A stretch of DNA of 63,895 bases, filler included, from Bipalium vagum (Eukaryota), in the NCBI GenBank assembly GCA_037834085.1. It is 3 parts of 3 records of this genome, joined end to end, with 100 filler letters (N's around TTAATTAATTAA, not from the genome) between each part and the next. Parts side by side here need not be neighbours in the genome. Positions count along the whole stretch, not along the records: positions 1 to 31,831 come from JBBMKC010245900.1; 2 more parts are not named here. One strand, written 5' to 3'. Below, one piece after another: positions 1,462 to 31,681 of this stretch. The number at the start of each line of letters is the position of its first letter. Position 1 is the first letter of the stretch. The translations under genes and the position numbers were made by a program. The notes under the pieces are model-generated. The model was not told the DNA's origin. It worked only from the letters and a program-made list of their open reading frames with translations, and ran no database searches.

Positions 1462-2401
1462 ATGTTTAAAAAAAATTGTAAATTTTTTAAGGGTGGATTA
1501 AGAAAACGAAGAGGTAGTAGTGACAGTGACGACGAAGTGGCAAAACCTATTTATGCTAAAAGAAATAAAATCGAACCCGTTCTACAATTTGTAAGTAATT
1601 TTGATTAATTGATTAATTGATTTATTGATCAATTGATCAATTATTTATTTTAAACAGCGTACTAAAAATTCTAACACTGAAAATGCAGTTCACAAATATG
1701 AAGCAGATAAATCCATATCAAAGTCCAGGCCCGCCGATTTGGGAGCAACAGCTCATTTGGAAATCGACACAGAACTAACCAAAGACGCTCAATCGATATT
1801 TGAAAGAGTCCAGAAGGATAAAATGAAAATGGACGATGGGTTATATCACGGGTTGAAATGTTATGACACAATGACCGAGGCAAAGGATACCATAGCTGGA
1901 AACGCATCTAGTGGCTTCAACCGAAAGGGTCCGATGAGAGCACCGACGAACATTCGTTCTACGACCAGGTGGGACTATCAACCGGACATTTGCAAGGATT
2001 ACAAAGAAACCGGTTTTTGTGGCTTCGGAGACAGTTGTAAGTTTCTCCACGATCGTTCAGACTACAAGTTTGGGTGGCAGCTTGAACAGGAGGAGTTGAA
2101 TCACCAGTCCGATGATAGTGCCGATGACAAATATGAAATCCACGAATCAGATGACGAGATAAACGTTCCACACTTTTGCACATATTGCAGAGAAACCTTT
2201 AAGGAGCCAGTGGTAACCAGGTGCATGCACTACTTCTGCTCTAAGTGCGCTCTGGAAATGTATAAAAAGTTGAAAGGAAAATGTCAGGCGTGTGAGCAAG
2301 ATACTGAGGGCAATTTCAAAAACGCGGATTATATATTTGCAAAGATCCAGGCCATCGAAGACAAAAGGAACAATAAAAATGTCGACGATGATTCAGAATA
2401 A
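1462..2401 (+). CDS. RNF113A: RING finger protein 113A / Cwc24 spliceosomal CCCH-RING protein (~290 aa). Exons 1462-1590 and 1658-2401
   Basis: Contains KGPMRAPTNIRSTTRWDYQPDICKDYKETGFCGFGDSCKFLHDRSDYKFGWQLE (CCCH finger) and the C3HC4 RING CTYC..CMHYFCSKC..CQAC. A phase-0 GTAAGT...ACAG intron at 1591-1657 joins ATG 1462 in frame. Confidence 0.96.
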
Positions 2402-3014: not shown

Positions 3015-3450
3015 TTAGTATCTCGCCAAGGCTTTTTCTAAAAACCACCACATGTATTGAAAATAATCACTTAAATCGATATAGTCATACATGAGTTCTT
3101 GAGTAATCAATCGTCCCGATCTATAATGGTTTTCATAAAGGATGATATTTGAGAATTGTAGTTGAGGCAAGTATGGTGGCAGAAATCTGTAAGCAATACC
3201 TCGTTCTGTCAGCAACTTAATAACATCTTTTCGGTGATGGAACATGCAATTGTACATCACCAATATATCCCCAGGATTTTGATTGAAATGATTGCATAGG
3301 TTGTCACTAATAACTGTCCCCATCGAAAGATCCATCTTTTTCGAAGCATAAAATGCCTGTAAATTTGATTTTATAAATAAACAGATGACAAAACAATGAA
3401 ACCTGTCATTTTAATAGCAACCATGCAGCTGATATTTTTGGCTGACTAAA
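3015..3450 (-). mobile_element. IS630/Tc1-like DDE transposase remnant
   Basis: ILVMYNCMFH (decayed MDN..FH) and YRFLPPYLPQL (decayed FLPPYSPQLNPIE). An upstream KNISCMVAI fragment lies in another frame. Confidence 0.65.
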
Positions 3451-4212: not shown

Positions 4213-4580
4213 ATTGAGAATTAAACATCTTAGTTTATAAAAGATGAAAAAAATTGTATGTATAGATTCCAAAGTCATTGAAAGTAGGTTGAATTAAAAA
4301 GCCAGATTGTTCATGATTATCTTGAAATTATTTATAGGTTAAATATTTTCAAGATATTTCATAATTATCATAAAAATATTCCCATAACTGAAAATTGAAT
4401 TCAAATTTTTAAAAAATTTGTGTTAAGAAATTAACCTTAGTAAACTGGTTAAAACAAATTTTCTGTTGTCAAGAAATTTAATGTAGTTTAATCAGAATAT
4501 CTCAAGCACCATAATAGAAATTAATAAAACTACAAGAAATAGAGTTTAATTTTTATTAATAAAATTGCTAAGAAAAGCCT

Positions 4581-7500
4581 TCAAAAATCATCAATATAAA
4601 GACTGGTTGTGGACACGACTCCTCGGTAAATCGTTTCTTGTGTTTTCTTAAAAAGCGATGCCAATCCAAAGTCAGCCATCACTTTGGAAGCCGATTCACA
4701 ATGACGCAGCAGTTCATACAGTCGCAACAAGCACCGGATTATGTCACCAGACTGAACATCGGTTCGTTCGACAATATCGGAAAATTTGTGACCTAAAGAC
4801 CACATTTTCACCGATTCCACAAGAGAAGAGTTGATTTGAATCTCATTATTGAAAATATTGAAATTTTCCTGACAAGTATTAATCTGAAAAACAAGCGAAA
4901 CAATCGCTCCTTATAATATCAATCTTTGGAAAGCTCACTAAATTACCTTATCGACAACAGAAATCACTTCTTTGAGAATCTTTTGCAACGAAACACTGAG
5001 ATCCGAAAGACGAATTTCCGAACTTTGATTATTTGTTACTTTGTTCTCGTACATGAGACAAGACAAAGAAGCGGCAATATCACAAGGGGCAGCATTGAGG
5101 AACACCCCAGACAAAATGATTTCTGTAACAACGATCTCGTAGGTTTCGATCTCACAAGCAATTCTTCCTGTTTCCATGGCAATAAAAAATTAATTTTAAA
5201 TCGATTTAAACTTTATAACGATTACACCTTTCAATTTGATCGTATCCTTGTCAGCATTTATGAATTCTAAGCTCTTCAATAGCGCCAATTTGTTCCGATA
5301 TTCTGGTAGAAAGGCTAAATTATCATCAGACAGGGCTTTTTGTAAATAATCCACTTTAGACATCATTTTCTCTGTGTTGTCAATCAGTTTTATGTGATCC
5401 GACAGACACAAACAATCGATACACGGGAACGTCAACAGAGGACTTTCCGAGCTTTCAAAATGGAAATAATATGTGAACAACTGCCTCTGACGACTGTCCT
5501 AAAAAAGAAATCAATAACAACCCTGTCATTAAATTTTAGTTGATGTTCCAGTACTAATACACAATTTTCTGATTTTCTCCTTACCTTTATATTCAATTCC
5601 TTTTCATAATTTGCCGTGTCCAACTTGCTTTTGAAGCTTCCACAAATGGCCTGGATTGCATTTCGGAACGCGAAACTGTTATCGATCCATTCAGACCAGG
5701 GTGTTGAGTTGCGGAAAAATCTCGACGTCCAATACTTTTCAATATCCTGAACATCGATTCGATTCTTTGTTAAACAGACTTTATTGATGTCGTTCAAATT
5801 CACAGTAATGATCTTCGGGATCACTTCATTGATCTAAAGCGGATCGAGAAAGAAATCGGTAATGAAATGCAAAAACACACACAAGAGCAATTACCAACCT
5901 TTTTGTGGACGATCTCATCAACCAAAGGTCTGATGGCAACAATGTTCGGAGTTCCGGTGGCATTTTTTTGTTCGGAATTTTTGCTCGTATCGACACTGCA
6001 GGAAGCGGGATCGTCCTCATTTCTTAAATCGTACGTGAGAACTCTCAATTTGTATTTATCATTTCCCGATGATTGACGAATCAATGACAAAACAAGGGCT
6101 GGAATCAATAATCGATCTTTACAATGAGCAAAGTCAGCAATATCAGACGAGTCCAGCAAAATCAATCGACCGGCACACAGGAAATTAACAAGCTCGTTTT
6201 TACTTTCCATTATCTCGTTGACTGCGTTCTTTGCCGTTTTGTATTCCAGGCATTTCTGAAAGAGACAACAAAAAAGCCCAGTTAAATCCGCACACTGTTG
6301 TCATTTGCACAATCTTCAATACTTTGTAGTACTGGTTGACAACGTCGATATTGCACCCTTTGTCAAGACAAGCGAGGCCGGTACAATTGATGGTTTTCAA
6401 TTTTTCTGATATCTCTTCGAAATCCAGACAATTCTCGTCGTATTTCTTTAACCGATTTGCTTCGATAAAACTGTGTCGAATCATGTGCTAAAATCAATTT
6501 TTCAATATTTTCAAAAAAACTATAAATCATTTCCTAAAATTGATAATTTTGAAAATTAACAATGAAAATATTTTACAAAAAATAAATCACTATTACACAA
6601 AGACTTGATTTTCGACCGGAAAATCAATCAAAAATATTTATATATTGTATCGATTGATTTCATAAGAATAAAAAATTAAAATCGATTTTAAAATATTATC
6701 AATATCTCAAATTCGATAAAATTAGACCAATCGATATTCACTAAAAATTCCTTCCTTAATAAAACAAAATAATTTAAACAATCAATAGGTTTCATTTCAC
6801 CGCGGAAATGAAAAAATTAAGCAAAATACGAGAATAAGTCAATATTCGGTTAATAAAATCAATATTTCACTCAGCATTCAAAAGAAACTTACTTGAATGT
6901 TGAACTGTCGGTTTCGATAGAGACTCAAAATAATGTTGTAAGAAATCTTAAACTTTGACTCCAATTGGCACGCAGAACCGATCAATGTACGCTTTAATTC
7001 ATCTTGCGAATAGATTGTGGATGTCGGCTTAATTAAGATGATTACGGTTCCGATTTTGTCCAGACCCCTCCGACCAGCTCGTCCGGCCATTTGAGTAAAT
7101 TCACCTGTCAAAACCCAAAATCAATGATCAAATTAAAATTCACATTCTTATACTTGATATTAATAATAATAATAATAAGCAATATCATGATAATTATATA
7201 AATAAACAATAATTATCATAATAAATCAGTATAATTGTATTCTAATATTAATAAATAAAGGAAAAAATGATCGAAAAATATAGAACATTTTTTACAGAGA
7301 AAATCAATATGATAAAAATAGAAATAATTATACAAATATTATTATGATTATTTTAATTTTATGACATCAATATAGTAATATTACGTAAGGAAAAAGTTTT
7401 CGGAAAAATTAAAACTAAATAAAATTTCTAATAATAATTATATTGCATTTTTATTCGCCTTGTTTATCGAAGGTGAATCGAATTTTTAATTTTAGATAAA

Positions 7501-10500
7501 TTTAAATTTATTATAAATAAAATATTTCGTAATATAATCTTTTATTTTTATTTGTTTGAAAAAATTGCAAATTATAAAAATAATTTTCTATGAGTGACTC
7601 ATGTGATGTGTGATTGTATACAAGTCGACTGTATATAAGTTTTTCAGAAATTTCAGTTTGAAAGATGAAACACGTCATGGTCGTCCAAAAGTAATGAACA
7701 ATGTAATTTTATTGAAAACAATTCAAGCAGATCCGACAATTAGAACCGATGAATTATCTAAGTTATTCTACACAAGTTAAACGATTGAAAATAATGTGCA
7801 TGATCTTAGCCATTCGTCAGTGTGGGATAAGTGGGTATCATTCCCTTAATAAGGTTTACAAAGAAAATAGAGTGAATTTTTGTAAAGAACTGCTTGATAA
7901 AAGAAGATTTTTTCTCCAATGTGATAACTGTTGATGAGAAATGGGTGTATTATGAAAACGTATCTAGATGCAGATCATGGAAAAAGTCAGGGGGAGAACC
8001 TGTAGCAGTAGCTAAACGTGGTTTGACTCATAAGTTATTAATGTGTATTTTTTGGGATATTAGAGGAGTTATGTATAAAGAATCTCTGAAAAATAGACAA
8101 ACGCTTATTACAGAAGTATATATTCGATAATTTGATAAAGTCAATTCGGTCTTGGCCTTCACATCTAATTAGAAAAGGAATAATCTTTCAACACGATAAC
8201 CCCAAACCACATACGTCAAATTTAACAAAACGAAAGCTTGACAGACTGCGTTGGACAGTTTTGAAACATGCCTCTTATTATCCGGAAAAATCCCCTTCAG
8301 ATTATGATCTATTTAGCAGTATAGTTTATCTGGCACTAAATTCAAACCGAGTGATGAAACAATTTCACAAGTTCAATCTTATCTAAGTTTCAAAGATCAT
8401 GATTTCTTTAAAGAAGGCATTTACAAGTTGTTGAAGCGTTGGGAGCAGATTGTGAAGAACAATGGTGCATATATTTTATACTAAATGGTTTTTGTTATAT
8501 ATCCTCTAATACATGTATTATTTTCAATAAAACATTGAACTAACATTTAATTTTAATTTTTCCGAGAACGTTTTTTGTTACCAGATATAAGGTCACTCGA
8601 AAAGCTCAATGGATATTTATAATAACTATTTTCCTTGAGCTTTATTTGAATGATTTGGTTTAGTTTGAAATGTGAGTATTTTGAAATTCGATTGTTAATA
8701 TTATTTTTGAAACTTTCGAACAAAAACAAAGTTTTTGTTATTAACCTTCCAGCAGGAGTTAAATTTAAGCGATTCCGGATTAGTCAAAAGATTTGTAATG
8801 ATTGTGAAAATAATATGGTTTCAGAATATACTGGTAGAAATGCTATTTCGTAAAGGTTAAAGATTAATATAATTATATATTTTTTATATTAATATCATAA
8901 ATATTATATTAAAAGTTAAATGTAATGACAACCAAAGGAAAATTCAATTTATCTCATTATCAATGAAGCAAACGAAGATCATCAATCAATTCAAAAACCC
9001 CGAATTCTGACTGATTGATTGGTGTTTAATAGTAATAAATTTTGTTGATGGATAAACTATATTGATTTACAATAATATTTGATTTGATAAAAATTGTCCT
9101 TTTAAACTTCTATTTAGCCCAAATAAATTATGAAAAAACCAAATAACATTCTAGCCAGCTTTATATTGATTTCTTTAATAATAAAAAATACAATAATAAT
9201 AATAACAATCAGGAGAATAAACAAACCAGGCAAAAGAAGCCTCTTTTTATTGCCATCGTGTTTGGAAATACTGTCAAAGACCACAGATCTTGCTGGCATG
9301 TTCACTCCCACCGCGAAGGTTTCCGTAGCAAACAATACTTTCACATAACCTTGAGAAAACAGAATCTCAACGATCTAAGAAAAAATATAAAAATATTGTT
9401 TAGTTAACTGAAAAATATGATTAAATTTGTATTGATTATAATTTATAAGGATTTTTTGTAATTTTATTTGAAAAATGTAATTTTACTTCAATGTCAATAA
9501 CTTTAAAACTGTACGACAGAATTCAAAATAATTTTGGATTTGTACATAGCTTAACATAATCGATTAAATACTGTTCAAATTTTACGATTTCGAATTTCTT
9601 GTCAAACCAGTGTTATTCAATCATTTTTACTTAATATTGATTATCATTACAATTATGAGGTTTAATTTTTATTCGGGGTTAAAAAGGGAAAAGATTTTTA
9701 TTTATTTTATTATTTTTAAAGATCCAAAATCAATTGATTATATATAAATATATATTTCTTTAAGTAAATCAATTTAGAAAATAGAAACTGCGAAATTAAA
9801 TATCGTGTGTCAATGAAATTCTTACCAAAATCGAATGGGGAACATCAAATATCATCGAATCTTTGAAAAAAGTTTATCAAGATGATGAACCAAAGAAAAC
9901 AACAGTTTTTGAATTGGTACGAAAATTTAAGTCGGGCCTAGAGAGCAAAAAAGGTGACATCGACCTGGGTTGACCATCAACATCAATGACTGAGGAATTT
10001 GTAGTTACTGTTGAATTGATATTTGAAAACTACAAGTGAATATGGTTCCAGATTATAATCAATTCTTTGGAAATTGTATAGTATTTTGTAAGAATTCTGC
10101 CAGATGGTGCGAAAAGCGTTGCGTGGAAAATACAGAATGTCTTGAAATCCAGTTTATCAACTTATATAATGATAACCACGAGGACTTTTATAGCAGACTG
10201 GTAATAAGACATGGATTTACTAATACGATTCAGAAAGTAACAATCAGCCTAAGCAATGGTTATCAGAAATATCAAGTTTTATAATCAAGCCAAGTTCATT
10301 ATTTTATGAGATTCTTAAAGTGTAATCCTCATATACTCTCTCGAGAATCAGCTGACAGTTAGTGGTAGATACTACGAAGACGTTAGACGAAAACTTCATG
10401 TTACACTTATAATGTAACGCCCTGGAAAAAAATTCAATTTTGTTTCACCATGACACTTGTGCAAGCTGTCCAGGGCTGTACTTCAAAAATATCATTGGGA

Positions 10501-13500
10501 AATACTCTTGAAAAAGAAATATCAAGAGCACTTACTGAGAAGTAATATCGAAAATCAAGAGCTGTTTTAAAATACAAAGTAGTAATTCAAATCCAAAGAT
10601 CAAATTTTTTATAGAAATGGTTTAGAACGCTGGCGCGACACCGTATGGAAAAGTGTTACCTATTAGATGGTTTATATGTCAAAAAATACATTTTTATTAT
10701 TTATTTTTTATTTGTATGATATTTCCTGAAACTTTTTGATTCCTTTTGTATGTTCAAAAATATTGAATAAGTCAAAAACTCACTTCTTTTAGAATTGGCA
10801 ACAATCCTGAATGATGAATTGCAACTCCTCTCGTAAGCAAACATTTAAGCTCCAAAACTTGCGGCAAGTTCCGATCAGAAGCATTTGACATTTTCCGATT
10901 GATTATTTCTTTGAAATATCTTTTTACGTTAGATTTCTCAACTTAAACAAAATTTTGATATAATAATATGAACTGTTATAATCATTATCTAGATGAACAA
11001 AATAAATAAATATTGAAAATTATTCAAGAAAACAAACCAATAAAAATGAAAAAAAAATAATTTGATCAACATTGAATTTTTGAGAATTAATTAGAACAAT
11101 AATATTATTAAATAATAATAAAATAACTATCCATAAAATAAATAAATATTCAAAATTATTCAAAGAAAATATAGACCAATCAAAATAGGGGAAATTTCAT
11201 AAACAAATATTTTTTTTTGAGAATTACAATATTGACAAAAAATAACTTCGATAATAAAATTTATAAATATCAATTAAAATAAATTAAATTTCAAAATTAT
11301 TTTAATTTTTACTTTATATTATTTAGAAAATTGATTAAATTAATTAATTAAAATTAAATAAATTTATTAACAAGACAATATCTTTCAATCAAAAATTAAT
11401 ATATAAAATCAATATTTATTATTAAAAATAATTTAATTTAATAAATGTGTAAGAATTATTATTATCAATTATAATTGTTATTATTATTTTAATTATTACT
11501 ATAACTATGATTATTATAATGATTTTATAATCATTTTTTTTGGTAGAGTATAAAGTTTTTGAAATCATTCCATATCACTGGTTTGAATAAACTTAAAATT
11601 TTTGATTGATTACCTTCGTTGAGAAAATCGACCGATTTCAAATCAAGTGCCGTTTCATGGATCCTTTTGCGAGAAAACATAAAACAAATCACAGGTAAAT
11701 TGTCCTTTTCCTTTAAAGCTTCAAAAAGAGCCAGCCATTGATTGCGATCTTTGTTGGACTTGTTACAACTCTCAGACATTTTTAATTTTAATTCTAAAAA
11801 ATTAATCAATAAAGATCTGCCCATCAAACATAATAATAAATAATCATAGTAATAATAATTTCTTAATTACCTTACTATTTTTAATATGAGCGATATTATA
11901 TTTACATTAATTTTTCATATAATAAAAACTGTACTTTAATCATATTGAGAAAATTGTAAGTGGTAAATGTAGAAATCAATGAAAACTATATTTCCAAAAG
12001 AACATGACAAAATAAAATTTTATGATTCTATTAATATATATTTACCAAATATAAAAAATCGATAATTTATAATACAAAATCATATTTAAGAAAACACGTC
12101 GTTCAATTTTAATAACCAAACATCGATTGATTGAAATTAAACATTTCTTTTCAAACTATGTAAGTTCAAAAGAGATTTAATCAAATTATTATTATATAAA
12201 ATATATAATTGGCCAATAAAAAATGTTCAAATTGCCTTTTTCAATTTCTTTCCCTATCCCATTGAATTCAAATATAATTTTAAAATGAAAAGATAGATAA
12301 TCATATTTCTTTTAAAAACTGAATTTAATTAAATAATTAAAATAAATCAATTAAGCTGTGACTACCACCTGGGTTTTGGAATTTCTGATGTTTGTGAGAT
12401 GATTTCGTGTTCTGATGTTGATGATTATTGTTGTTGTTATTATTATTGTTATTGTTATTTGCAGCATTGGTGGGTTTCGATTGAAACTTTTTCATCGCCT
12501 TTTCCGTGTTTGTATTGACAGCGTCGTTGGCCAACTGATAACCTAAACAGTTTTATGTTGAAATTTATTTAGAAAAGTTCTCAGTAAATGCAATTTTAGT
12601 AAAATGCTCACCTCGACCAATGAAATTTTTATTTGCATCCATAATTTTGTACAGCTGATCTCGCCTATTACGTCCGGTTCCGGTAAATAGGTATATTTCC
12701 AAAGGAACGGGTCTTTTGACGGTACTGATCACTTGTATTTGTGTATCACGAATTCGACCGAGCCACTCGGCAAATTGCATGGTATTGGGAACTGTTGCAC
12801 TCAACATGACCAACTGAATTCGTTTTGGCAGGAGGATCATGATCTGTTCCCAAACATATCCGCGAGAATCGTCATTCAAATAGTGAACCTAAATAATTAA
12901 TTGTAATAATAATAATAATAATAATATCATATTAAAATAATAAATCAAAATTATGAATATATACTTTTAATATACCACATAAAAATGTAATGTCAGTACA
13001 GAGAAGGGTATAATTAATAGATAAAAATTATGCTAAAAATTACAAAAAAATGTTATTATTGACCAATCAAAAGCATACTATTAAAACTAATAAGGCTTTA
13101 GATCAAGGTACTGGTTACACTGAAACATTTATTTTTTATCTTTTTTGTATGCATCATAAGAATTTTTATTCAAAGTCAATATTTTATTAAATTAAATCGA
13201 TAATCAGACATTTTATTAATACTCACCTCATCCATAATGACAACTTCTAAATCCCTAATAGTCGGACAATCATTTTTCAGCATATTGTGAAGAATCTCTG
13301 TGGTCATAACCAGAATATATCTACTGGTTCCAGTTTTTATATCGCCCGTTAACAGCCCAACGTTATCATTGCCAAAAGTGATTCTAAATAAAATGATAGA
13401 AACGGTATTCCAAAGCACATGAATTTTTTTAAAAATTTAATTTATTTTACTTGAATTCTCGATATTTCTGATTGGACAAAGCTTTTATTGGACTGGTATA

Positions 13501-17036: not shown

Positions 17037-20000
17037 ATGGATCTCATATCCAGTAGTATAAACTTACATAAAATTCTTAATGAAATATGTACATTTTTTA
17101 TGCACATATTCAAAGACGACGTTGTACCTAATCTTCCTAACTTTGAACTCTTATATGAGTCTTGTCCTGATGAAAACAGGTTAAAAGTTATAAGCTTTCT
17201 TATTTCTGCAGCAATAGACATATTTGCTACTCAATCTCACCGAACTATTACAGTACTAATAGGTAATAAAATCGGATTGTGGCGTACACTAGTAGTTCGT
17301 TTATGTCAAAATCATTGTGCTGATAAGCATCATTTGCCATTCGAAATTGATATAATAGCATCTAGAAATAAATTAGTAGTAGAATCGTTGATATTTGATT
17401 GGGTAATTGCATAATTATTGCCTGTGAGTTTTGATAATTGATATAATTTTAGCCATTTTGCAATGAGATTGCATCGCAATTGTTACAATATTTCTGTGAA
17501 GCATTTCACGGAACCAATAACGTAAATCAACCATATATAGATGACTATGTGTCCAAATTTAAACCGAAATATAGACGGACAGAAGCTGTCAAGGTGATTG
17601 TGTTAGGAATGAAGTGGGTACACACTGTCCAAGGTAGTCCGAACTATGAACAGACGAAGCACATTTTGAAGCAGAACGTTATCAATTGCATTCTCATGTC
17701 GGACGTGCTGATGAAAAACCGTGAAGGTCAATTTGAAGAGATTTGGAATGAAATCGTTGCTCAACTGGACACGTATGACGAATTTGATCCGTCCAGAATT
17801 GATTCATTTCCGTTTTATTGTCAAATCAATCCGGTACTGAAACCGATTTGCGATTTGCTCCGAGTACTGTTCACGGAAGAGAACTCGATGACGGACTTTT
17901 CGAAAATCATCGGCAATTTCCATGAGATGAGTGAAAAGTACGAATCCGCGGAATTGTGGGGCCTAGAGTTAACCAACAACGTTCTGGCCGCTCTGAACAC
18001 AATTATGATCGAGATGGTGTTCCGAAAGTGTAAAGTTTTCCCGAAAATATCGGAAAACAACATGAAAATGTTCATAAACGCGATCGCCGTGCACGAGTCG
18101 ATCTCACAGATGGTTCTGATGTCAGAAGTCAACTATTGGGTGGATCGATTGAAGCGGAAACGTGTGGAACTGCCCGCCCAATTCCCGGAATTCTTTTCCG
18201 GAAATTGGAACATGACGACAAATGAATCAGTGTTCACGAAAATCCTGGACGATTATATTTTGAAGGTCTTGGACAACGAATCTGGCTCCGTTCCGGTACC
18301 AGGTTTAGTTGGATCAATCGAAACGAAGCCGTTCCAGTCGATGGTGACAAACAGCATCAAATCTGTAACGACGAGTCTGTTGATGAGAGATTCCTATTGC
18401 TCACCAATTGGTGACAACAAAATCTTGATGATTTCAAAAATTGTCGATAAAATGGCCCAACACCACGGGGTTCAACTGCAGTCACATTTTTTGGACAAAA
18501 TCGATCGGATTCTTCACAAATTCAACTCGACGATTTTCAAAAAGAATAACACGTCCCCGGACAAGCTGGACAGCAAATCGTTCATCGTTCCTCTGATGGA
18601 CGGTGTTGATTATCGGAAATTCGTTACGGAGATCTGGAAATTCGTCAATCAGTCGAATATTTTCCTGAAACCAATCAGTATTCAAGATTATCTTATCGAT
18701 ATTCGACAGGAATTGATGTCGCAAATACCACCGGATCAAGCCGATCGAATCGTTTCACGGATCATGTTCTACACGGGATGGCGGTTCCGGTTGCGATCTA
18801 TGGAAGTGATGTCGTCGGAAATGTTCCGATTTCATTTGGTGTTCAATTTTCTCAGTCAAAACTTACCCTCGAAATCGCTGGTTGAGGAAAATATGAATTT
18901 TTGGATGAGAAAACTGTCCGGTATCGATTGTTCAAAATCAGTCACCAAGGGTCAAACACCGTCTCCATTTCAGATCAACGAGTTCTTCATGGCTCAGAAA
19001 TTGGAAAATGTCCAATCTCACATTGTCCAAGTTCTCCGTGGCTCAAAAAACATTTCCATTCCTAATCTGACCGATGTTCCGTTTTCGTCGTACAACAAGG
19101 GTCTCGAAAGCACCAAGGCGATTTTGCAGATTTTGCGTTCTGTCTTTTCGCTATTGAACGAAGATTCGTCTCGTCGACACAAACACGACAATGTCAAGAA
19201 CTGGTTGAGTCATATGAAAACATTGGAAACGGATTTGCACATAATTTGCAGTAAGCTGGACGCCGATCGACTCCAGGTGTTGGCAGAGTTGACGTTCTTG
19301 ATTTCGTTCATTGTCACGTCGTTGGGAGCCGACGATAGCACTCTGGTGAACAGCTACAGAAAATTACCGTCCAATTATCACCAGACGATCTATTTGGATC
19401 GTGACGTCAGTGATGAGGAGCTTTTGAAATTACCCGCAAAACGTGGAGCAGTGAAACAGGAGGCTCACGACAGGTTAGTTGGGTTTTAAATCGATAACAA
19501 TTTTACGAATAATATTTTCATAAGAATTCACAATTAATCAAAACTCGATTGAATTTTCTGTCTATATTAGAAATCACCATATCTTTCAATTAATAATCGA
19601 TTTTTTTGAAATCAATATTTAACAAAAACATATTATTAGTTGAATTCCATGAAATAGATTAATTGTTATCAATTTAGACAAGAAATCGATGGAAAATCAA
19701 AATTGGGTCTGAAAAAAAAGCTCATCGACATGGAACAAGAGGAGCCGAAAATGAAAAAACTCTGCCGAGGCGTCTCTAGTCTTGATGATAATAATTATCG
19801 CGATGGTGATGACATTGATGAGGTTGACTATCCGATAAAATTCGAGTCTCGAATTTCCGAAAAACCGACGATTCATTCCAAAGTGAACTTTATTAATTCG
19901 TCCAGCGATATTACAATCGGAGAAATGATCGAATCGAGAATAACCTACATCAGTGAACCGAATCTGAAATCGATATGCATCGATCCCGGTAAAGGAAAAT

Positions 20001-22379
20001 CAAGACCGCCGAAATATATCCAGATCTCCGCTTGTCCCAACAGAAATCCAATCACAATTGTGAAAAAACCAGTGTTAGTTTTGAAATGGTTTTCGTAACA
20101 TGTGATGATTTCATTCTTTTCTGTGAACCCAGCATTTCGTTTTCTTAATATTTTGCTTTATTAACCCTTTTTCTTATTATTATAATTATAATAACAATAA
20201 TAATAATTACTACTATTACTATTACTAAAATATTATTAACTATATTTTGAGCAGACTGACTCAAAAGAGACACAAGACCAGTCCCGTTAAATTGAACGAA
20301 TCAAAGATCCTTTATAATTTCAATATCATTCGTGAAGTCGGCAATGGAACGTTTGGGAAAATATTTGAGGCCGTGGATAAATTTTCCAGTATGGGAGTTT
20401 TTTTGTTGATTATTTTCCCTTTGAAATTGACACTGGTACTGTAAATTTTTTGCAGATCGAAAAGTTGCACTTAAACGAATCACACTCACCAATAGAGAAA
20501 ACGGTATTCCTCAAGCGATTTTGAGGGAAATATTTCTCTATAAATCCGTCAACCATCCTAATTTGATCCAGTTCATCGATATTGTGGTCAATGAAATCGA
20601 ATCAATAAAGTCCAAATTTTCTGATCTCGGTAAAATCGATTTTTGTCTTAATTTTTTTTTCGTTGTATCAATAAATATTTTCTTTCCATCGTCATTCTCG
20701 TTGGGCTCCTTGTGCGCGCTCTGTCCGTCTCGTAATTCCGTTTTCCAGAAGTCATTGTACCGAAATCGTTCTATTTCGTGTTCGATTATGTGGAACACGA
20801 CCTGCACGGCCTGCTGAAATCGAAGAGCATGATATTCTCGCTCACTCAAATCGGCTTTCTTAGTAGACAATTGTTCAGCGGTCTGGCATATCTGCACGAC
20901 AAAAACATCATCCACCGTGACATCATTCCGTCCAATTTGATGATAACCAATCAGTAAGAGATAAAATATCGATTTTTAAAAAAATCGATTAAATAAATTT
21001 TTATTGATTCATAGTAGTATTGATATTTTAAAATTTATGGATTTTTTAAATTAAATTTTTCAAAATTTGTTTTTTTACAGAGGCATTTTGAAAATTGCTG
21101 ATTTTGGAAACGCACGTCTGCTGATAAAAGACGTTCAATTGGACAACAACCTGTCTCTGACACCGAAAACCGTTCCGTTTCTCTATCGGGCCCCGGAGAT
21201 TCTGATGGAATTGGAAACTTACGGAACGGAGGTGGATATGTGGTCGGCCGGATGTGTCATTTACGAATTGTTCACTGGATCAATATTGTGGAGTTCTGAA
21301 AAGGAAAATTCCGATGGCAGCGAATCAGTGTTCGAACACATTTCCAACATTGCCAAAGTTCTGGGCAGTCCCAATTCCGTCGTGTGGCAATCGGTCAATC
21401 AGTCGAAGCATTATATATCATTGGTCAATCGTAATATTGTGCTCAATTACAGTCGGAAAATCGATGATCATATGAAAACGTGATTTATTCTTTTTATTAC
21501 TACTACTATTATTATTATTCTTAATTATCGTATTGATTAATTATTCATAAATTCTTAAATGTCTAAACAAGAAAAAAATCAATAAAATTTAATGTTTATT
21601 TTAATATTCATTGTTATATTGATTTTATTCCGATAAAATTGGACATTTATTCTTTCTGTCAGTATTCCATACGATGCCGCCGATGTTCTCAAGCAAATAT
21701 TCCAATGGGATCCAGCCAAACGGATGACGGCAAGAAATGCACTCGGTTCCAATTGGTTGGTGGATATCGAAATGGAATCGATAATGTCTACGGAGTATTG
21801 TTTATTTTCATCTGTGCCTCTCAAATCAGTCTTTGTGCTTGTGATTTAAGATTTCCCGACAAGGACTGTCACGAGCTATTGCTTCTGGAGACTGACAGAA
21901 CCAATGTTGTTCCATTGGCCATTGGAGAGGAAAGTGAAGACAGTCGATCGAAAACTACCACCATCACTACTACTGCAGCAACAAAAGCAGCTATAGTCGA
22001 TGACAGTCATTTGGCGAACATATACGACTCGACCAACAACAATGGTGGAATCGTTGTCGTTGCCAACAACAACGGAGGTGGAAATGGGGGTTTAATTATC
22101 AACAACACGAGCAACGAAATGGTTGGTGCAGAAGACGAGGAAATCAAGGAAGAGGACTTGATGAGGTTTGTCGATTCGTTATCGGGGCGCATTTTGGAGC
22201 TGGCAGACGTACTGGATCGCATGAGGAATGAGCCCGTGTGCACCGCCGATATTGTAAAGGGCGTCGTCATGAGAGCGGCTAGGGTCTGGAGCGGGACGGA
22301 AGCCATCAGACTAAGAATGGTGACGTTCATGTTGGACTATTTACTGAAACCAGACGAGAAACAGAAACTCGGATTCTGA
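17037..22379 (+). CDS. Putative ~1451-aa fusion protein: INTS5-like helical N-terminal region, linker, divergent CDK12/13-like kinase, and unknown C-terminal helical domain. Exons 17037-17402, 17453-19473, 19678-20073, 20255-20388, 20456-20629, 20749-20953, 21081-21479, 21663-21794, 21851-22379
   Basis: All 8 GT-AG introns are phase-compatible; total 4356 nt = 1452 codons. Kinase motifs: [71 protein letters not shown], and the CDK12/13-specific DCHEL extension. The N-terminal motifs align by eye with INTS5. The junction at 19473/19678 needs transcript evidence. Confidence 0.72.
20255..21890 (+). other. CDK12/CDK13-family protein kinase domain (divergent), spread over exons 4-9 of the gene above
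   Basis: Spliced translation ...[52 protein letters not shown]... and [54 protein letters not shown]. This parallels CDK12 as recalled: [48 protein letters not shown]. Confidence 0.9.
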
Positions 22380-23569
22380 CCTTTGTAGTGTGTTCTATTT
22401 TTTTGTTATTTTATCAGTAATCGTCCCAATTTAAAGAATGCTGATCGATTATTACGAGAGAGAATATTAGTAAATGGTTGTAGAGATGTATACTTCACGA
22501 GATTTTCGCCAAGTTCCATTGTTATTTTTGTAAAGTTTTCGTTTTTGAAAAATGTAAATTTAATGTGTAGTACAAAAATAAATTTATTTTGTGTATTTTT
22601 TTATTTTTGGAAAAATGAATATTAGTTTTTTTGTGACAAAAGGATTTTCTTTTTGACATTCTGACAGACACATTTCGATTCTAAACTGGCTGCCAAAGTT
22701 GAGGCCGTCGCTAAAGTTTCAGCACCTCATAGAGTTGTGATACGAATGTTTGATATTAATAATGCCTTCAACCCACACAAAGTTAAAAATCTAAAACGTT
22801 CTTATTACCTTCGATTATAACGGATAACTTCTGGGTCTTGTTTCTTTTCATTTAAATACTGGAAAAATATTTATATCAAATTTTTTTACAACGGATGTGT
22901 TCATTACAATATTAATATCTTGATTTTATGGCTTACGTTGGGTGGCAATCAATATCTGTGTTTCTTTAAAAAATTCTGTTCTGTAATACTTGTTGATTTG
23001 ACGAAATGGCCATGAGAAGAAAATTGAACATCTGAAAATTATTGAGAACAAGTTGCCGTTTGAGAGATTGATTATTGTGCAGAAAATGCAAAAATAAAAT
23101 TACCACGCGAGGAAATCGTTTTTTTGTCAATTGGGAATATAAAGGCTTCTCAAAAAATCCCAGAACATGTTTTTAAATGTTGTCTAAATAATTCGGTGAA
23201 GCGTTGGTATTTATTTATCGCATCACACACTTTGAAGGTGATACAACAAATTTGGATGCTTAGTCAAATTCTTTTGTTTTATTTAAAAATTCAAGTTACT
23301 TTTGTTGTTTATATGATTTGATTTTTTAAGGAAAATTTGAATTATAAACAAAAATAAATTAACAAATAAAAATTTTGCTTATCACAATAATACTACTCCG
23401 GAAAATTGAAGATTCTAAAGAAATATTAAAAAAAGAAGTAATTTTGGTTTGGAATTTATTCAGCAATTTCATATGAAAACATCTTGAAGGCCAACAGTTG
23501 ATTCAGTTTTAATTATAAATTATACAGTAGGCGAAAACAAATGAACTGAATAGTTAAAGACAATAAAAG

Positions 23570-24069: not shown

Positions 24070-24420
24070 TCAACGTTTCAGGTTCAGTTGATCAGAAATT
24101 CTCTGGTAATGAAAACAATAATTTGTCAAGATTTTTAAATTTATTCCTAAGAATTCGCTTATTGAGAGACATGAAAAAACGATGTCGTTTGCATTTAAAT
24201 CTGGTTGGTTAATAGTGATTATGCTGGGAATAAAACTATCTCCAAAGTCATTGAAGCGTTCAACATTATTCTTTCCAATGTGTGAACGAGCATTGTCCAT
24301 TTGCACAGTCACTTTCTGACACGACTGCATTTTGTTACAAATCATAGGCATACCTTCAATGGTCATCAATTCTAATAATTATTAATAATATTATTTCAGA
24401 CCCGTAATTGTATCTTCAGT
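24070..24420 (-). mobile_element. Tc1/mariner DDD transposase fragment
   Basis: VTVQMDNARSHIGKNNVERFN..ITINQPDLNAND, a decayed QQDNARPH...QPxxSPDLNxxD. Confidence 0.65.
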
Positions 24421-28788: not shown

Positions 28789-29430
28789 TTAAATATGATA
28801 TGGATTATCTTCCATTCTAAGAAGTTCATCTATTGTGTGTTGTCGCAAGTTTGTTATCTTCCTGTCATTGTTATACAGTTTTTGTGAACGATATTTGGCG
28901 GTTGAATGCTTTTTATCGTTTCTGTTTGGAACCATTGAAACTTTGTATGATTTCAGACCTTCCTCTTTGCGGACTTTTTGAACATAACTAGTCGACATTT
29001 TAACTTTTTTAGCCGTATCACGAATAGAGATTCCGGGATTTTTATGAAATGTTCGTATCACTTCCTTGGCCTTTTTCTCTGAGATAAATCCCTTCTTTCG
29101 TCCACATCCAACTTTTCTTTCTGTGCTTAATCGTTTATCGAAGTTTTCAAGCACAAGTGTTACCGTTGATTTGGAAACATTTAGGCTTTTTGCAACATCT
29201 CTGTGAGATAAATCCACATTTTCCAGCTTTTTGCGCACAATTAATTCACGAATACTTTTTTTTGTTGAGACCATTCTTCTAAATTTTATAGAAACTAAAA
29301 AATTATAGATTCTTTATTATAAACTAATGATTCAGTTATAGATCCGTGTACTGACCTATATTTTTACAATTATATCTGAGGTGTCAAATGTGTTTGTATG
29401 CGACCATTTTTTTTCGAATACACTCTTTAT
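28789..29430 (-). mobile_element. Tc1-like element 5' portion (N-terminal HTH of transposase, DDE domain lost)
   Basis: ORF 28789..29274: LSHRDVAKSLNVSKSTV..RKVGCGRK..NPGISIRDTAKKV..GLKSYKV. A TIR-like end lies near 29403-29428. Confidence 0.75.
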
Positions 29431-30858: not shown

Positions 30859-31681
30859 TCAATGGAGGTTACAGGAAAATATTTTCACCATGTGGGGTTC
30901 GTTTAAAGAATATTCTGCCGCTACCAATTTATTGTCCCGGGAAATCACAGCAGCCTGGACACAACCTAGACCACTTTTTCCGTTAAGCACAATTTCCGTA
31001 TAACCACCATCCGACGAGTTGAATACAGAGATACATCTGTTCACAGAATCAGACACAAGTATTCTGTTATTTATGAAATAAATACTGTTAATAAACACGT
31101 GTAACCCAGATCCAGGAATGTATAACTTCATTCTTCTTAACGGCGATCCCGCCTTGTTAATGACGAATATTTCGTTCGAATGAGATTCGCTGAGATATAT
31201 CTCGTCACGGGCGGTATTAACAGTCATTAGGGTAAAATATCCTTCGTCATTAATCGTAATAGTTGTAAGTCTTTCCCCACATAGTGAAAAGCATTCAATC
31301 GTCTGGGATTTGGTCAACACGAGAATGGTATTAGAGAAGCCAGATGTCAAACAGATAGGGTTAGATTGGCAGATGAATACACGTTCACTTACTCCAGACG
31401 AGGTTATTAGATTAACAACTGAATTTCCATAGTTAGCAATAGCAAAGTACAATTTTCCCACTGCACAAACGGAAAGTGGACTAGAGAAAGGAAATGTTTC
31501 GTCTTGTATACTATATTGTTTTATTGAGAACGTCTGAATCCCTCCAATATTGAATCCAATAATTCTATTATTACCAGAATCACAGACAGCAATCAAACCA
31601 TTGTTCATTACAGATACGGATCTTGGGAACGATAATGGAGATTCAGAATCATTTAACTTTGCTCGTGTCAATAATCTGTTT
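30859..31681 (-). CDS. Terminal exon encoding an NHL-repeat beta-propeller (TRIM-NHL/Brat-like C-terminus). The 5' exons are missing, and an assembly gap lies upstream
   Basis: LSFPRSVSVMNNGLIAVCDSGNNRI, FSSPLSVCA, NPICLT, EIYLSESHSNEI, RILVSDSVNRCISVF. The AG acceptor at 31682-31683 is phase 2; the stop is at 30859. Confidence 0.85.

What the first reader, a model, noticed from the sequence alone, without database searches (positions are those of the whole stretch)
17037..22379. Putative INTS5-like / CDK12-13-like kinase fusion gene
Seen: nine exons splice in frame into one ~1451-aa ORF. The ~800-aa helical N-terminus is joined by a 204-nt phase-2 intron (CAG|GTTAGT 19473, TTTAG|A 19678) to a linker and a CDK12/13-type kinase, where CDK12/13 normally has an RS/Pro-rich N-terminus. 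Inference from my recollection of human INTS5: (a) [28 protein letters not shown] (17531-17614) aligns without gaps to [28 protein letters not shown]; (b) [21 protein letters not shown] aligns to [20 protein letters not shown]; (c) [13 protein letters not shown] aligns to FIRANPKAWAPVI; (d) [12 protein letters not shown] aligns to TVPFLLQLAVMSPAL. These motifs are collinear with INTS5. Established: INTS5 with INTS8 forms the Integrator shoulder that positions PP2A, which opposes transcriptional CDKs on paused Pol II. I know of no protein physically linking INTS5 to a CTD-kinase fold; it could be a lineage-specific pause/termination switch.
Basis: partly seen in the sequence, partly recalled or inferred. 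Interest (0 to 1): 0.9.

Follow-up and report, generated by a model that had tools for sequence, protein, structure and literature searches.

The report
Orphan helical domain joined to CDK12-like kinase
A nine-exon gene model joins an ~800-residue helical protein of no recognisable family to a fast-evolving extra copy of the transcription kinase CDK12/13; the claimed likeness to Integrator subunit 5 fails every test I could run, and the join is supported only by comparison with a relative, not by RNA.

Summary
Nine GT..AG exons (17037-22379, + strand) read as one 1451-codon frame with no internal stop.

The kinase half is a divergent paralogue of CDK12/13:
- Its closest copies in the same genome are clear CDK12/13 genes.
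- It shares at least three exact intron positions with them.
- It keeps the family's DCHEL tail motif and the alpha-D glycine.
- It lacks the catalytic-loop lysine (HRDIIPSN; HRDITPSN in a relative) and the polybasic cluster.

Canonical CDK12/13 genes lie on other contigs.

The ~795-residue N-terminal half is conserved in two related organisms (63-68% identity). It matches no Pfam family, no solved-structure sequence and nothing else among 1.8 billion representative proteins.

INTS5 is not supported. There is no INTS5_N or INTS5_C profile hit and no match to human INTS5. Two of the three reader motifs I scored are at chance level. A better INTS5 candidate lies on another contig.

The join across the 204-base gap is likely (about 0.8) but unproven:
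- The gap looks like this gene's other introns.
- A relative keeps a phase-2 donor and a phase-2 acceptor at the same places.
- No RNA data exist.

The fold of the N-terminal half could not be modelled.

The parts
17037..17402 (+). Exon 1 (122 aa), start of the N-terminal helical region. The ATG at 17037 follows about 1 kb of DNA with GC 0.20.
   Evidence: 79% identical to the relative's contig L001, with the same intron position after ..FDW. No Pfam hit above noise and no hit among solved structures.
17453..19473 (+). Exon 2 (673 aa), the bulk of the orphan helical domain. It ends at the phase-2 donor CAG|GTTAGT.
   Evidence: Relatives P0001 and P0002 are 68% and 63% identical. No Pfam family. 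Nothing else among 1.8 billion representatives. No solved-structure match. About 26 helices in a low-confidence model.
18146..18175 (+). Basic motif [10 protein letters not shown], invariant at 8 of its 10 positions in three species. It looks like a nuclear-localisation signal; that reading is inference.
   Evidence: Invariant columns R232 L233 K234 R235 K236 V238 E239 P241 in alignment A1. The nuclear-signal reading rests on general knowledge and was not tested.
19474..19677 (+). Proposed intron 2 (204 nt), the gap that decides between one gene and two.
   Evidence: GC 0.21. Stops in all three frames. No polyadenylation hexamer. Length is within the range of the gene's other introns, 50-183 nt. 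The relative keeps a phase-2 GTGAGT donor at the end of exon 2 (L001) and a phase-2 acceptor ahead of exon 3 (L004).
19678..20073 (+). Exon 3 (132 aa), a poorly conserved charged linker. The first in-frame ATG is at 19730.
   Evidence: 63% identical to P0003/L004. Similarity starts 6 codons upstream of the ATG at 19730, and that Met aligns to Ile in the relative. No Pfam hit.
20255..20388 (+). Exon 4, the kinase N-lobe start with glycine loop GNGTFG.
   Evidence: Conserved in L020.
20456..20629 (+). Exon 5, with strand beta-3 Lys (VALK) and the alpha-C helix (PQAILRE).
   Evidence: Pfam Pkinase. Best solved-structure matches are CDK2/CDK1-type, E about 1e-7.
20749..20953 (+). Exon 6, with the alpha-D glycine (EHDLHGLL) and the catalytic loop HRDIIPSN at 20913-20936. 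Ile (20925-20927) stands where the conserved Lys should be.
   Evidence: Pfam Pkinase 2.9e-14. Best solved-structure matches are CDK13, CDK12, Ctk1 and CDK9. The relative has HRDITPSN. Canonical copies in the same genome have HRDIKCSN.
21081..21479 (+). Exon 7, with DFG (as DFGNAR), the T-loop Thr, APE and the C-lobe.
   Evidence: Pfam Pkinase 1.8e-18. Best own-genome paralogues are the CDK12/13 genes on C203687 and C265235. Their exons begin at the same point and are aligned over 130 of this exon's 132 residues.
21663..21794 (+). Exon 8, the end of the kinase domain (..[12 protein letters not shown]..).
   Evidence: It matches the corresponding exon of the canonical copy L006 by eye and ends at the same place before FP..DCHEL. 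My Pfam query for this exon was one base out of frame, and tblastn gave no match to L006 for it, so neither tested it.
21851..22379 (+). Exon 9. It holds the CDK12/13-type C-terminal extension with DCHEL at 21864-21878, then a low-complexity stretch and an unexplained C-terminal segment of about 70 aa. Stop at 22377-22379.
   Evidence: DCHE found at 21864, and in the canonical copy L006 as FPKDRDCHELSSKKRRK. The role of DCHEL in CDK12 is described in PMC3973122. No Pfam family. Single copy in the genome.
22577..22582 (+). AATAAA, the likely polyadenylation signal of the whole gene.

Best explanation
Proposal: this is one gene of nine exons that encodes a 1451-residue protein in four parts.
1. 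An N-terminal all-helical domain of about 795 residues. It belongs to no recognisable family, is restricted to this lineage, and carries a conserved basic motif that looks like a nuclear-localisation signal.
2. A poorly conserved charged linker of about 190 residues.
3. A kinase domain that arose by duplication of CDK12/13. It keeps the ATP-contacting DCHEL tail, the alpha-D glycine, the beta-3 Lys, the alpha-C Glu, HRD, DFG, APE and the T-loop Thr. It has lost the catalytic-loop Lys and the polybasic cluster.
4. A tail of about 165 residues.

The structured helical domain stands where canonical CDK12/13 carries its low-complexity K/S/E-rich arm.

Inferred mechanism: a nuclear, cyclin-dependent, ATP-binding kinase of reduced or altered activity (or a pseudokinase). 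The helical domain would target it to partners, instead of an RS-type arm.

Shown: the exon structure, conservation in relatives, CDK12/13 paralogy, the residue changes, and the absence of any INTS5 signal.
Inferred: the splice across 19474-19677, nuclear location, cyclin binding and activity level.
For: Frame and splice sites.

The gap looks like an intron:
- GC 0.21, stops in every frame, no polyadenylation hexamer, and a length like the other introns.
- The flanks of the gene are about 1 kb or more of AT-rich DNA.

Comparative support for the join:
- In the relative, the exon-2 frame ends in GAT|GTGAGT, also phase 2.
- In the relative, exon 3 is preceded by a pyrimidine tract and CAG|G, also phase 2. 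The local sequences and lengths differ between the two species.
- Strong donor hexamers occur about 4e-4 per base here.
- The window's first ATG in exon 3 is not conserved, and similarity begins upstream of it.

CDK12/13 paralogy:
- Exon 6 is closest to CDK13/12.
- Exons 6 and 7 are closest in the own genome to C203687 and C265235. C203687 (L007) hits CDK13/12 at 1e-45, 17 orders ahead of other CDKs. C265235 (L006) is nearly identical to it in these exons.
- Intron positions are shared with the canonical copy.
- DCHEL is present in both, and its meaning is given in PMC3973122.

Loss of the Lys in two species.

Orphan status of the N-terminal half.
Against: - No RNA run holds this locus, so no junction read exists.
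- The relative's contigs are too short to show exon 2 and exon 3 on one molecule. There the gap exceeds 470 nt and its content is unknown.
- ATG codons lie early in exon 3 in both species, so a separately started kinase message remains possible.
- Exon 5 resembles CDK1/2 more than CDK12, and exon 7 alone is unspecific.
- The fold of the N-terminal half is unknown because the model has pLDDT 39.
- No known CDK has this architecture.
Confidence: 0.68

Rival explanations
1. Two neighbouring genes on the same strand. The first encodes an orphan helical protein of about 800 residues that ends at TAA 19487-19489. The second is a divergent CDK12/13-like kinase gene that starts at ATG 19730 or nearby. 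They would be transcribed separately or as a dicistronic message.
For: An in-frame stop lies 4 codons after the proposed donor, and ATG codons lie early in exon 3. There is no RNA evidence for the junction. Gene callers on the relatives' contigs reported the pieces separately, although they do not model introns. In the relative the two pieces are more than 470 nt apart.
Against: - Only about 240 nt would have to hold a 3' end and a promoter, and no AATAAA or ATTAAA is present.
- A consensus donor sits just before the stop in both species, and a phase-matching acceptor sits before exon 3 in both. This holds despite sequence and length divergence.
- The candidate start codon is not conserved.
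- No nematode-type spliced-leader RNA was found, but that search was weak.
Confidence: 0.2
2. One reading: the N-terminal half is an INTS5 homologue, so the protein physically links an Integrator shoulder subunit to a CTD-kinase fold.
For: INTS5 evolves fast, and the genome shows no strong INTS5 match anywhere. A language-model look-alike search lists other large helical nuclear proteins, but none above 0.88.
Against: - No INTS5_N or INTS5_C hit in the window at E up to 10.
- No match to human INTS5 chains at E up to 10, with a profile of three species or with exon 1.
- Motifs (b) and (c) are at chance level. Motif (a) was picked freely among many segments.
- The same human motif is matched far better (score 55, 0 of 2000 shuffles) by an open frame on contig C264218. 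That frame also hits Pfam INTS5_N (E 0.0024) and human INTS5 residues 209-251 (E 0.011).
- The window protein shows only noise against that contig.
Confidence: 0.04
3. A decaying or non-functional duplicate: a kinase pseudogene lying next to an unrelated open frame.
For: The catalytic-loop Lys is lost and the residue differs between species (Ile against Thr). The polybasic cluster is lost. Divergence from the canonical copies is fast.
Against: All nine exons are intact. Exons 1-7 are 63-87% identical to a relative, with splice sites in the same places and no frame breaks. All other catalytic motifs and DCHEL are kept.
Confidence: 0.04

Closest known systems
[quoted passage not shown]
   Same: - CDK fold.
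- The FYxVF-[DE]Y-x-[DE]HDL-x-GLL segment with the alpha-D glycine.
- T-loop Thr.
- C-terminal extension with DCHEL at the same distance from the end of the kinase domain.
- At least three exact intron positions shared with this genome's own CDK12/13 gene.
- A long region ahead of the kinase domain.
   Different: - The catalytic loop lacks the Lys (HRDIIPSN against HRDIKCSN).
- DFGNAR instead of DFGLAR.
- PQAILRE instead of PITAIRE.
- No polybasic cluster after DCHEL.
- Only 35-47% identical to the canonical copies in the aligned exons, whereas those copies match human CDK13 far more strongly (E 1e-45).
- The N-terminal arm is a conserved, predicted-helical domain rather than a low-complexity RS or K/S-rich arm.
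- It is an extra copy, not the orthologue.
INTS5 (Integrator complex subunit 5)
   Same: A large helical protein of roughly similar size, and one 28-residue segment with weak similarity.
   Different: - No profile or sequence match.
- Two of the three reader motifs I scored are at chance level; motif (d) needs a gap and was not scored.
- A better INTS5 candidate lies on another contig.
- Fold not testable here.
Pseudokinases and low-activity kinases that lack the catalytic-loop lysine
   Same: The Lys of HRDxKxxN is absent, while the nucleotide-binding elements are retained.
   Different: Every other catalytic motif is intact and conserved, so residual or altered activity cannot be excluded. 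No such case is known to me within CDK12/13 (own knowledge; not searched exhaustively).

Membership tests
INTS5 | Match to Pfam INTS5_N (PF14837) | tested here: not met
   No hit for exon 1 or exon 2 at E up to 1, or at E up to 10 for exon 2 and the two relatives. The six-frame scan of the whole genome found two weak places, neither in this window.
INTS5 | Match to Pfam INTS5_C (PF14838) | tested here: not met
   No hit. The model rang nowhere in this genome or in the controls, so this test is weak.
INTS5 | Sequence similarity to human INTS5 as in solved Integrator structures (7cun_E, 8rbx_e) | tested here: not met
   A profile of three species and exon 1 alone were searched at E up to 10. No INTS5 chain was listed. 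A 63-aa open frame on another contig does hit those chains.
INTS5 | Being the genome's best INTS5 candidate | tested here: not met
G000:C264218 (L017 5449-5640) hits INTS5_N at E 0.0024 and human INTS5 209-251 at E 0.011.
INTS5 | INTS5-like helical-repeat fold | tested here: inconclusive
   The AlphaFold2 model from a three-sequence alignment has mean pLDDT 39.3 and pTM 0.24, so no fold search was justified.
INTS5 | Binding to INTS8 and positioning of PP2A | not testable with these tools
   This needs co-purification or a confident complex model.
CDK12/13 | CDK-type kinase domain | tested here: met
   Pfam Pkinase on exons 5, 6 and 7. The best solved-structure matches are all CDKs.
CDK12/13 | Closest relatives are CDK12/13 rather than other CDKs | tested here: inconclusive
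   In favour: exon 6 is closest to CDK13/12 by a small margin. The best own-genome paralogues for exons 6 and 7 are the CDK12/13 genes, by margins of 4 to about 22 bits over the CDK11-like copy L009. Against: exon 5 is closest to CDK2/1 and exon 7 alone is unspecific against solved structures. No tree with reference sequences was built.
CDK12/13 | C-terminal extension with the DCHEL (HE) motif that contacts ATP | tested here: met
   DCHEL lies at 21864-21878, 16 residues after the end of the kinase domain, at the start of an exon. The canonical copy L006 has the same arrangement. The motif is defined in PMC3973122. A phmmer search with this short stretch alone found nothing.
CDK12/13 | Polybasic cluster after the HE motif | tested here: not met
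   The window reads [12 protein letters not shown], while the canonical copy reads DCHELSSKKRRK.
CDK12/13 | Glycine in helix alpha-D (xHDLxGLL) | tested here: met
   EHDLHGLL in the window and in the relative. The feature is described in PMC3973122.
CDK12/13 | Catalytic loop HRDxKxxN with the Lys | tested here: not met
   HRDIIPSN in the window and HRDITPSN in the relative. Canonical copies have HRDIKCSN.
CDK12/13 | Gene structure shared with the genome's CDK12/13 gene | tested here: met
   The same intron positions occur before G-x-x-K-x-ADFG, after the exon-7 equivalent, and before FP..DCHEL. A nearby position occurs before FYxVF.
CDK12/13 | Low-complexity RS or K/S-rich N-terminal arm | tested here: not met
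   Upstream of the kinase lie a charged linker and, if spliced, a conserved helical domain. The canonical copies have K/S/E-rich N-terminal exons.
CDK12/13 | One-to-one orthology with CDK12 or CDK13 | tested here: not met
   Clear CDK12/13 genes lie on C234186 (1e-53 to CDK12) and on C203687 (1e-45 to CDK13). C265235 (L006) is nearly identical to C203687 in the aligned exons.
CDK12/13 | Binding to cyclin K and phosphorylation of the Pol II CTD | not testable with these tools
   This needs biochemistry.

The most novel reading that the evidence does not exclude
The splice is real. The lineage then carries a CDK12/13-derived kinase fold whose disordered RS-type arm has been replaced by a large, conserved, structured nuclear domain of a new family. 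That kinase fold has also lost its catalytic-loop lysine. It would act as a differently targeted, weak or non-catalytic CTD-kinase module, for example one that competes for cyclin K or scaffolds other factors.
Probability: 0.45. Interest if true: 0.55.

Novelty: new variant of a known kind. Interest (0 to 1): 0.4.

Why it matters
CDK12 and CDK13 are central regulators of transcription elongation, and they are known with disordered RS-rich arms. A natural copy with a folded N-terminal domain and an altered catalytic loop would show how a CTD-kinase fold can be re-targeted or turned into a scaffold. It would also give the orphan domain a functional context. Without RNA evidence, and in an unnamed, poorly assembled genome, this remains a lead. 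The eye-catching INTS5-kinase link is not supported.

Tried and rejected
**INTS5 and the N-terminal half**
- INTS5 profile and sequence tests were negative.
- tblastn of the N-terminal half against the INTS5 candidate contig gave only noise.
- Remote homology found only two close relatives. This covers the word-indexed search, full HMMER over 1.8 billion representatives, the ESM Atlas (generic helical proteins, best 0.88) and a JGI metagenome scan (nothing).
- There are no paralogues of the N-terminal half or of the tail in the own genome.
- The AlphaFold2 model of exon 2 had pLDDT 39, so no fold search was run.

**RNA and read evidence**
- The only run that holds the locus is a DNA run.
Local scripts still read the whole window file (for example).

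**Other searches**
- The nematode SL1 search in the genome found nothing and was weak.
- The region upstream of exon 3 in the relative has no match in this genome.
- The Atlas on the INTS5 candidate contig gave only generic HEAT-repeat look-alikes.
- phmmer with the DCHEL stretch alone found nothing.
- A literature search for the relatives' accession numbers found nothing.

All searches were exon by exon, by reference. Exons were concatenated only inside one script, to count length and stops.
- My Pfam query for exon 8 was one base out of frame, so it says nothing about that exon.
- No tree with reference CDKs was built, because no reference sequences were available by id.

Full report
**What is in the sequence**

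The window piece is contig C245900 of a 440-Mb assembly in 272,664 contigs. It is AT-rich (about 20-43% GC per kb) and eukaryotic, with short introns.

The nine exons are 17037-17402, 17453-19473, 19678-20073, 20255-20388, 20456-20629, 20749-20953, 21081-21479, 21663-21794 and 21851-22379. All introns are GT..AG. The total is 4356 nt, which gives 1451 codons plus a stop, with no internal stop.

- Donor CAG|GTTAGT, with GT at 19474.
- Acceptor TTTAG|A, with the exon starting at 19678.
- Phase 2.
- TAA at 19487-19489 if the gap is left in.

The joined protein was never searched or folded. The exons were concatenated only inside the script, to count length and stops.

**One gene or two**

No RNA run holds this locus. 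The question therefore rests on the anatomy of the gap and on comparison with a relative.

Anatomy of the 204-nt gap:
- GC is 0.21, against 0.31-0.48 for the exons and 0.14-0.38 for the other seven introns.
- Its length is close to two other introns of the gene (181 and 183 nt).
- It has 5-7 stops in every frame.
- It has no AATAAA or ATTAAA, whereas an AATAAA follows the final stop at 22577.
- Upstream of the ATG at 17037 lies about 1 kb at GC 0.20, so real intergenic DNA here is much longer than 204 nt.
- The donor hexamer GTTAGT occurs four times in 31.8 kb. Two of those are the donors of exons 2 and 3.

Comparison with a relative:
- A related organism, known from genomic Logan contigs of run SRR33002330, carries exon 1, intron 1 and exon 2 on L001. 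There the exon-2 frame ends in GAG AT|G TGA GT. That is a consensus GTGAGT donor in phase 2, the same phase as in the window.
- Its exon 3 lies on L004. It is preceded by a pyrimidine tract and CAG|G, also phase 2.
- The last ~40 residues of exon 2 and the first ~20 of exon 3 differ in sequence and length between the two species. Even so, both keep a strong donor just before the stop and a phase-matching acceptor.
- Strong donor hexamers occur at about 4e-4 per base. Chance is therefore a poor explanation.
- The window's first in-frame ATG of exon 3 (19730) aligns to Ile in the relative, and protein similarity starts six codons upstream of it.

Caveats:
- The relative's contigs do not link exon 2 to exon 3.
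- The gap in the relative exceeds 470 nt. Its content has no match in this genome.
- Both species have ATG codons early in exon 3.

I put the single-gene reading at about 0.8.

**The kinase half**

Exons 5-7 match Pfam Pkinase. Against solved structures, the exons give mixed answers:
- Exon 6 is closest to CDK13, CDK12, Ctk1 and CDK9.
- Exon 7 is unspecific within CDKs.
- Exon 5 is closest to CDK2/CDK1.

The stronger evidence comes from the genome itself:
- The best paralogues of exons 6 and 7 are on contigs C203687 and C265235. For exon 7 the match covers 131 of its 133 residues.
- The C203687 copy hits human CDK13/12 at 1e-45, 17 orders of magnitude ahead of any other CDK. The C265235 copy is nearly identical to it in these exons.
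- A further CDK12/13 gene lies on C234186 (1e-53 against 2e-33 for CDK9).
- The window gene shares intron positions with the canonical copy on C265235. These lie before G-x-x-K-x-ADFG, after the exon-7 equivalent, and before the exon that begins FP..DCHEL. A nearby position lies before FYxVF.
- Exon 9 begins FPDKDCHEL, and the canonical copy has FPKDRDCHELSSKKRRK. DCHEL is the motif of the CDK12 C-terminal extension that reaches the bound ATP. It goes together with a glycine in helix alpha-D (PMC3973122), and the window keeps that glycine (EHDLHGLL).

So the kinase is a duplicate of CDK12/13.

Derived features:
- The catalytic loop is HRDIIPSN, and HRDITPSN in the relative, against HRDIKCSN in the canonical copies. 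The catalytic-loop lysine is therefore gone in both species.
- The polybasic cluster after DCHEL is absent.
- DFG reads DFGNAR.
- The glycine loop, beta-3 Lys, alpha-C Glu, HRD Asp, the Asn, DFG, APE and the T-loop Thr are all kept and conserved.

I infer an ATP-binding kinase with reduced or altered activity, or a pseudokinase.

**The N-terminal half**

Exons 1 and 2 encode 795 residues. They are well conserved in two relatives: 79% identity for exon 1 and 63-68% for exon 2. Intron 1 is in the same place.

Nothing else is found:
- No Pfam family at E up to 10.
- No other protein among 1.8 billion representatives by full HMMER.
- No solved-structure sequence.
- No JGI metagenome locus.
- No paralogue in the genome.
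- The Atlas look-alikes are generic large helical proteins, all below 0.9.

The AlphaFold2 model built from three sequences is all-helical, but its confidence is very low (pLDDT 39).

One feature stands out. The motif [10 protein letters not shown] (18146-18175) is invariant at eight of its ten positions in three species. It looks like a classical nuclear-localisation signal, but that reading is inference.

**INTS5**

The profile part is met:
- INTS5_N and INTS5_C give nothing in the window.
- Human INTS5 chains are not matched at E up to 10.

- Motifs (b) and (c) are matched or beaten somewhere in 66% and 100% of shuffles.
- Motif (a) is reached in 0.7% of shuffles.
- Motif (d) needs a gap and was not scored.

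The same human segment is matched far better elsewhere in the genome:
- An open frame on contig C264218 (L017 5449-5640) scores 55, reached by 0 of 2000 shuffles.
- That frame hits Pfam INTS5_N at E 0.0024.
- Its best solved-structure match is human INTS5 residues 209-251, at E 0.011.
- It sits in a multi-exon locus of about 4.7 kb.

That locus is only a candidate, but it is a better INTS5 than the window gene. The window gene shows only noise against it. I put the INTS5 reading at about 0.04. The structural test remains undone.

**Comparison with what is known, and verdict**

The closest known family is CDK12/13. The kinase works like, and descends from, that family. It fails three family features: the catalytic Lys, the polybasic cluster and the RS-type arm. 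It is also not the orthologue.

I know of no CDK with a large folded N-terminal domain of this kind (own knowledge). If the splice is real, this is a new variant of a known kind, restricted to a small lineage.

Interest is moderate, for three reasons:
- The striking INTS5 link falls away.
- The fusion lacks RNA proof.
- The function of the orphan domain is unknown.

Noticed in passing
L017 (G000:C264218) 4354-9037, + strand; key open frame 5449-5640: Multi-exon locus whose 63-aa open frame hits Pfam INTS5_N (E 0.0024) and human INTS5 residues 209-251 (E 0.011). It is the genome's best INTS5 candidate. The other exons gave no hit.
   Followed up: partly
L006 (G000:C265235), L007 (G000:C203687), L008 (G000:C234186): At least two distinct canonical CDK12/13-type genes, both with HRDIKCSN. 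L006 and L007 are nearly identical in the aligned exons (alleles or a recent duplicate). L008 has a different exon layout. L006 also shows DCHEL followed by a polybasic cluster. The lineage may therefore have expanded this kinase family.
   Followed up: partly
L010, L011, L012, L015 (G000:C21597, C40256, C228593, C194907): Several divergent CDK-like open frames with FYLVFEY and HRD[LI]KP[ED]N motifs. L012 and L015 hold most of the kinase domain in one long open frame. They look like a family of extra transcription-type CDK copies.
   Followed up: no
L009 (G000:C68185): A 430-aa open frame that looks like CDK11 by its motifs (PITSLRE-like helix, VEHDLKSLM). It was identified by eye only.
   Followed up: no
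window 1739-2401 (+): A 220-aa open frame with a CCCH zinc finger and a C3HC4 RING finger (Pfam). This is the domain pair of RNF113/Cwc24-type splicing factors.
   Followed up: partly
window 3015-3335 (-), 28789-29274 (-), 24070-24369 (-): Transposase remnants. They include a DDE_3 fragment and a helix-turn-helix N-terminal fragment. The third open frame gave no Pfam hit but looks transposase-like by eye.
   Followed up: partly
window 30859-31671 (-): A 270-aa open frame with an NHL repeat (Pfam 1.2e-10).
   Followed up: partly
window about 5200-12900 (-): A string of open frames that looks by eye like a Ski2/Mtr4-type RNA helicase (for example ..LSATVPN..). Pfam gave no hit at E 0.001 on the four pieces tried.
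   Followed up: no
L004 1-446: In the relative, the DNA ahead of exon 3 has no match in this genome. It holds the start of a short open frame on the opposite strand that runs off the contig (88 down to 2). This could be chance, a mobile element inside the intron, or a neighbouring gene.
   Followed up: partly
They were kept out of all later searches.
   Followed up: no
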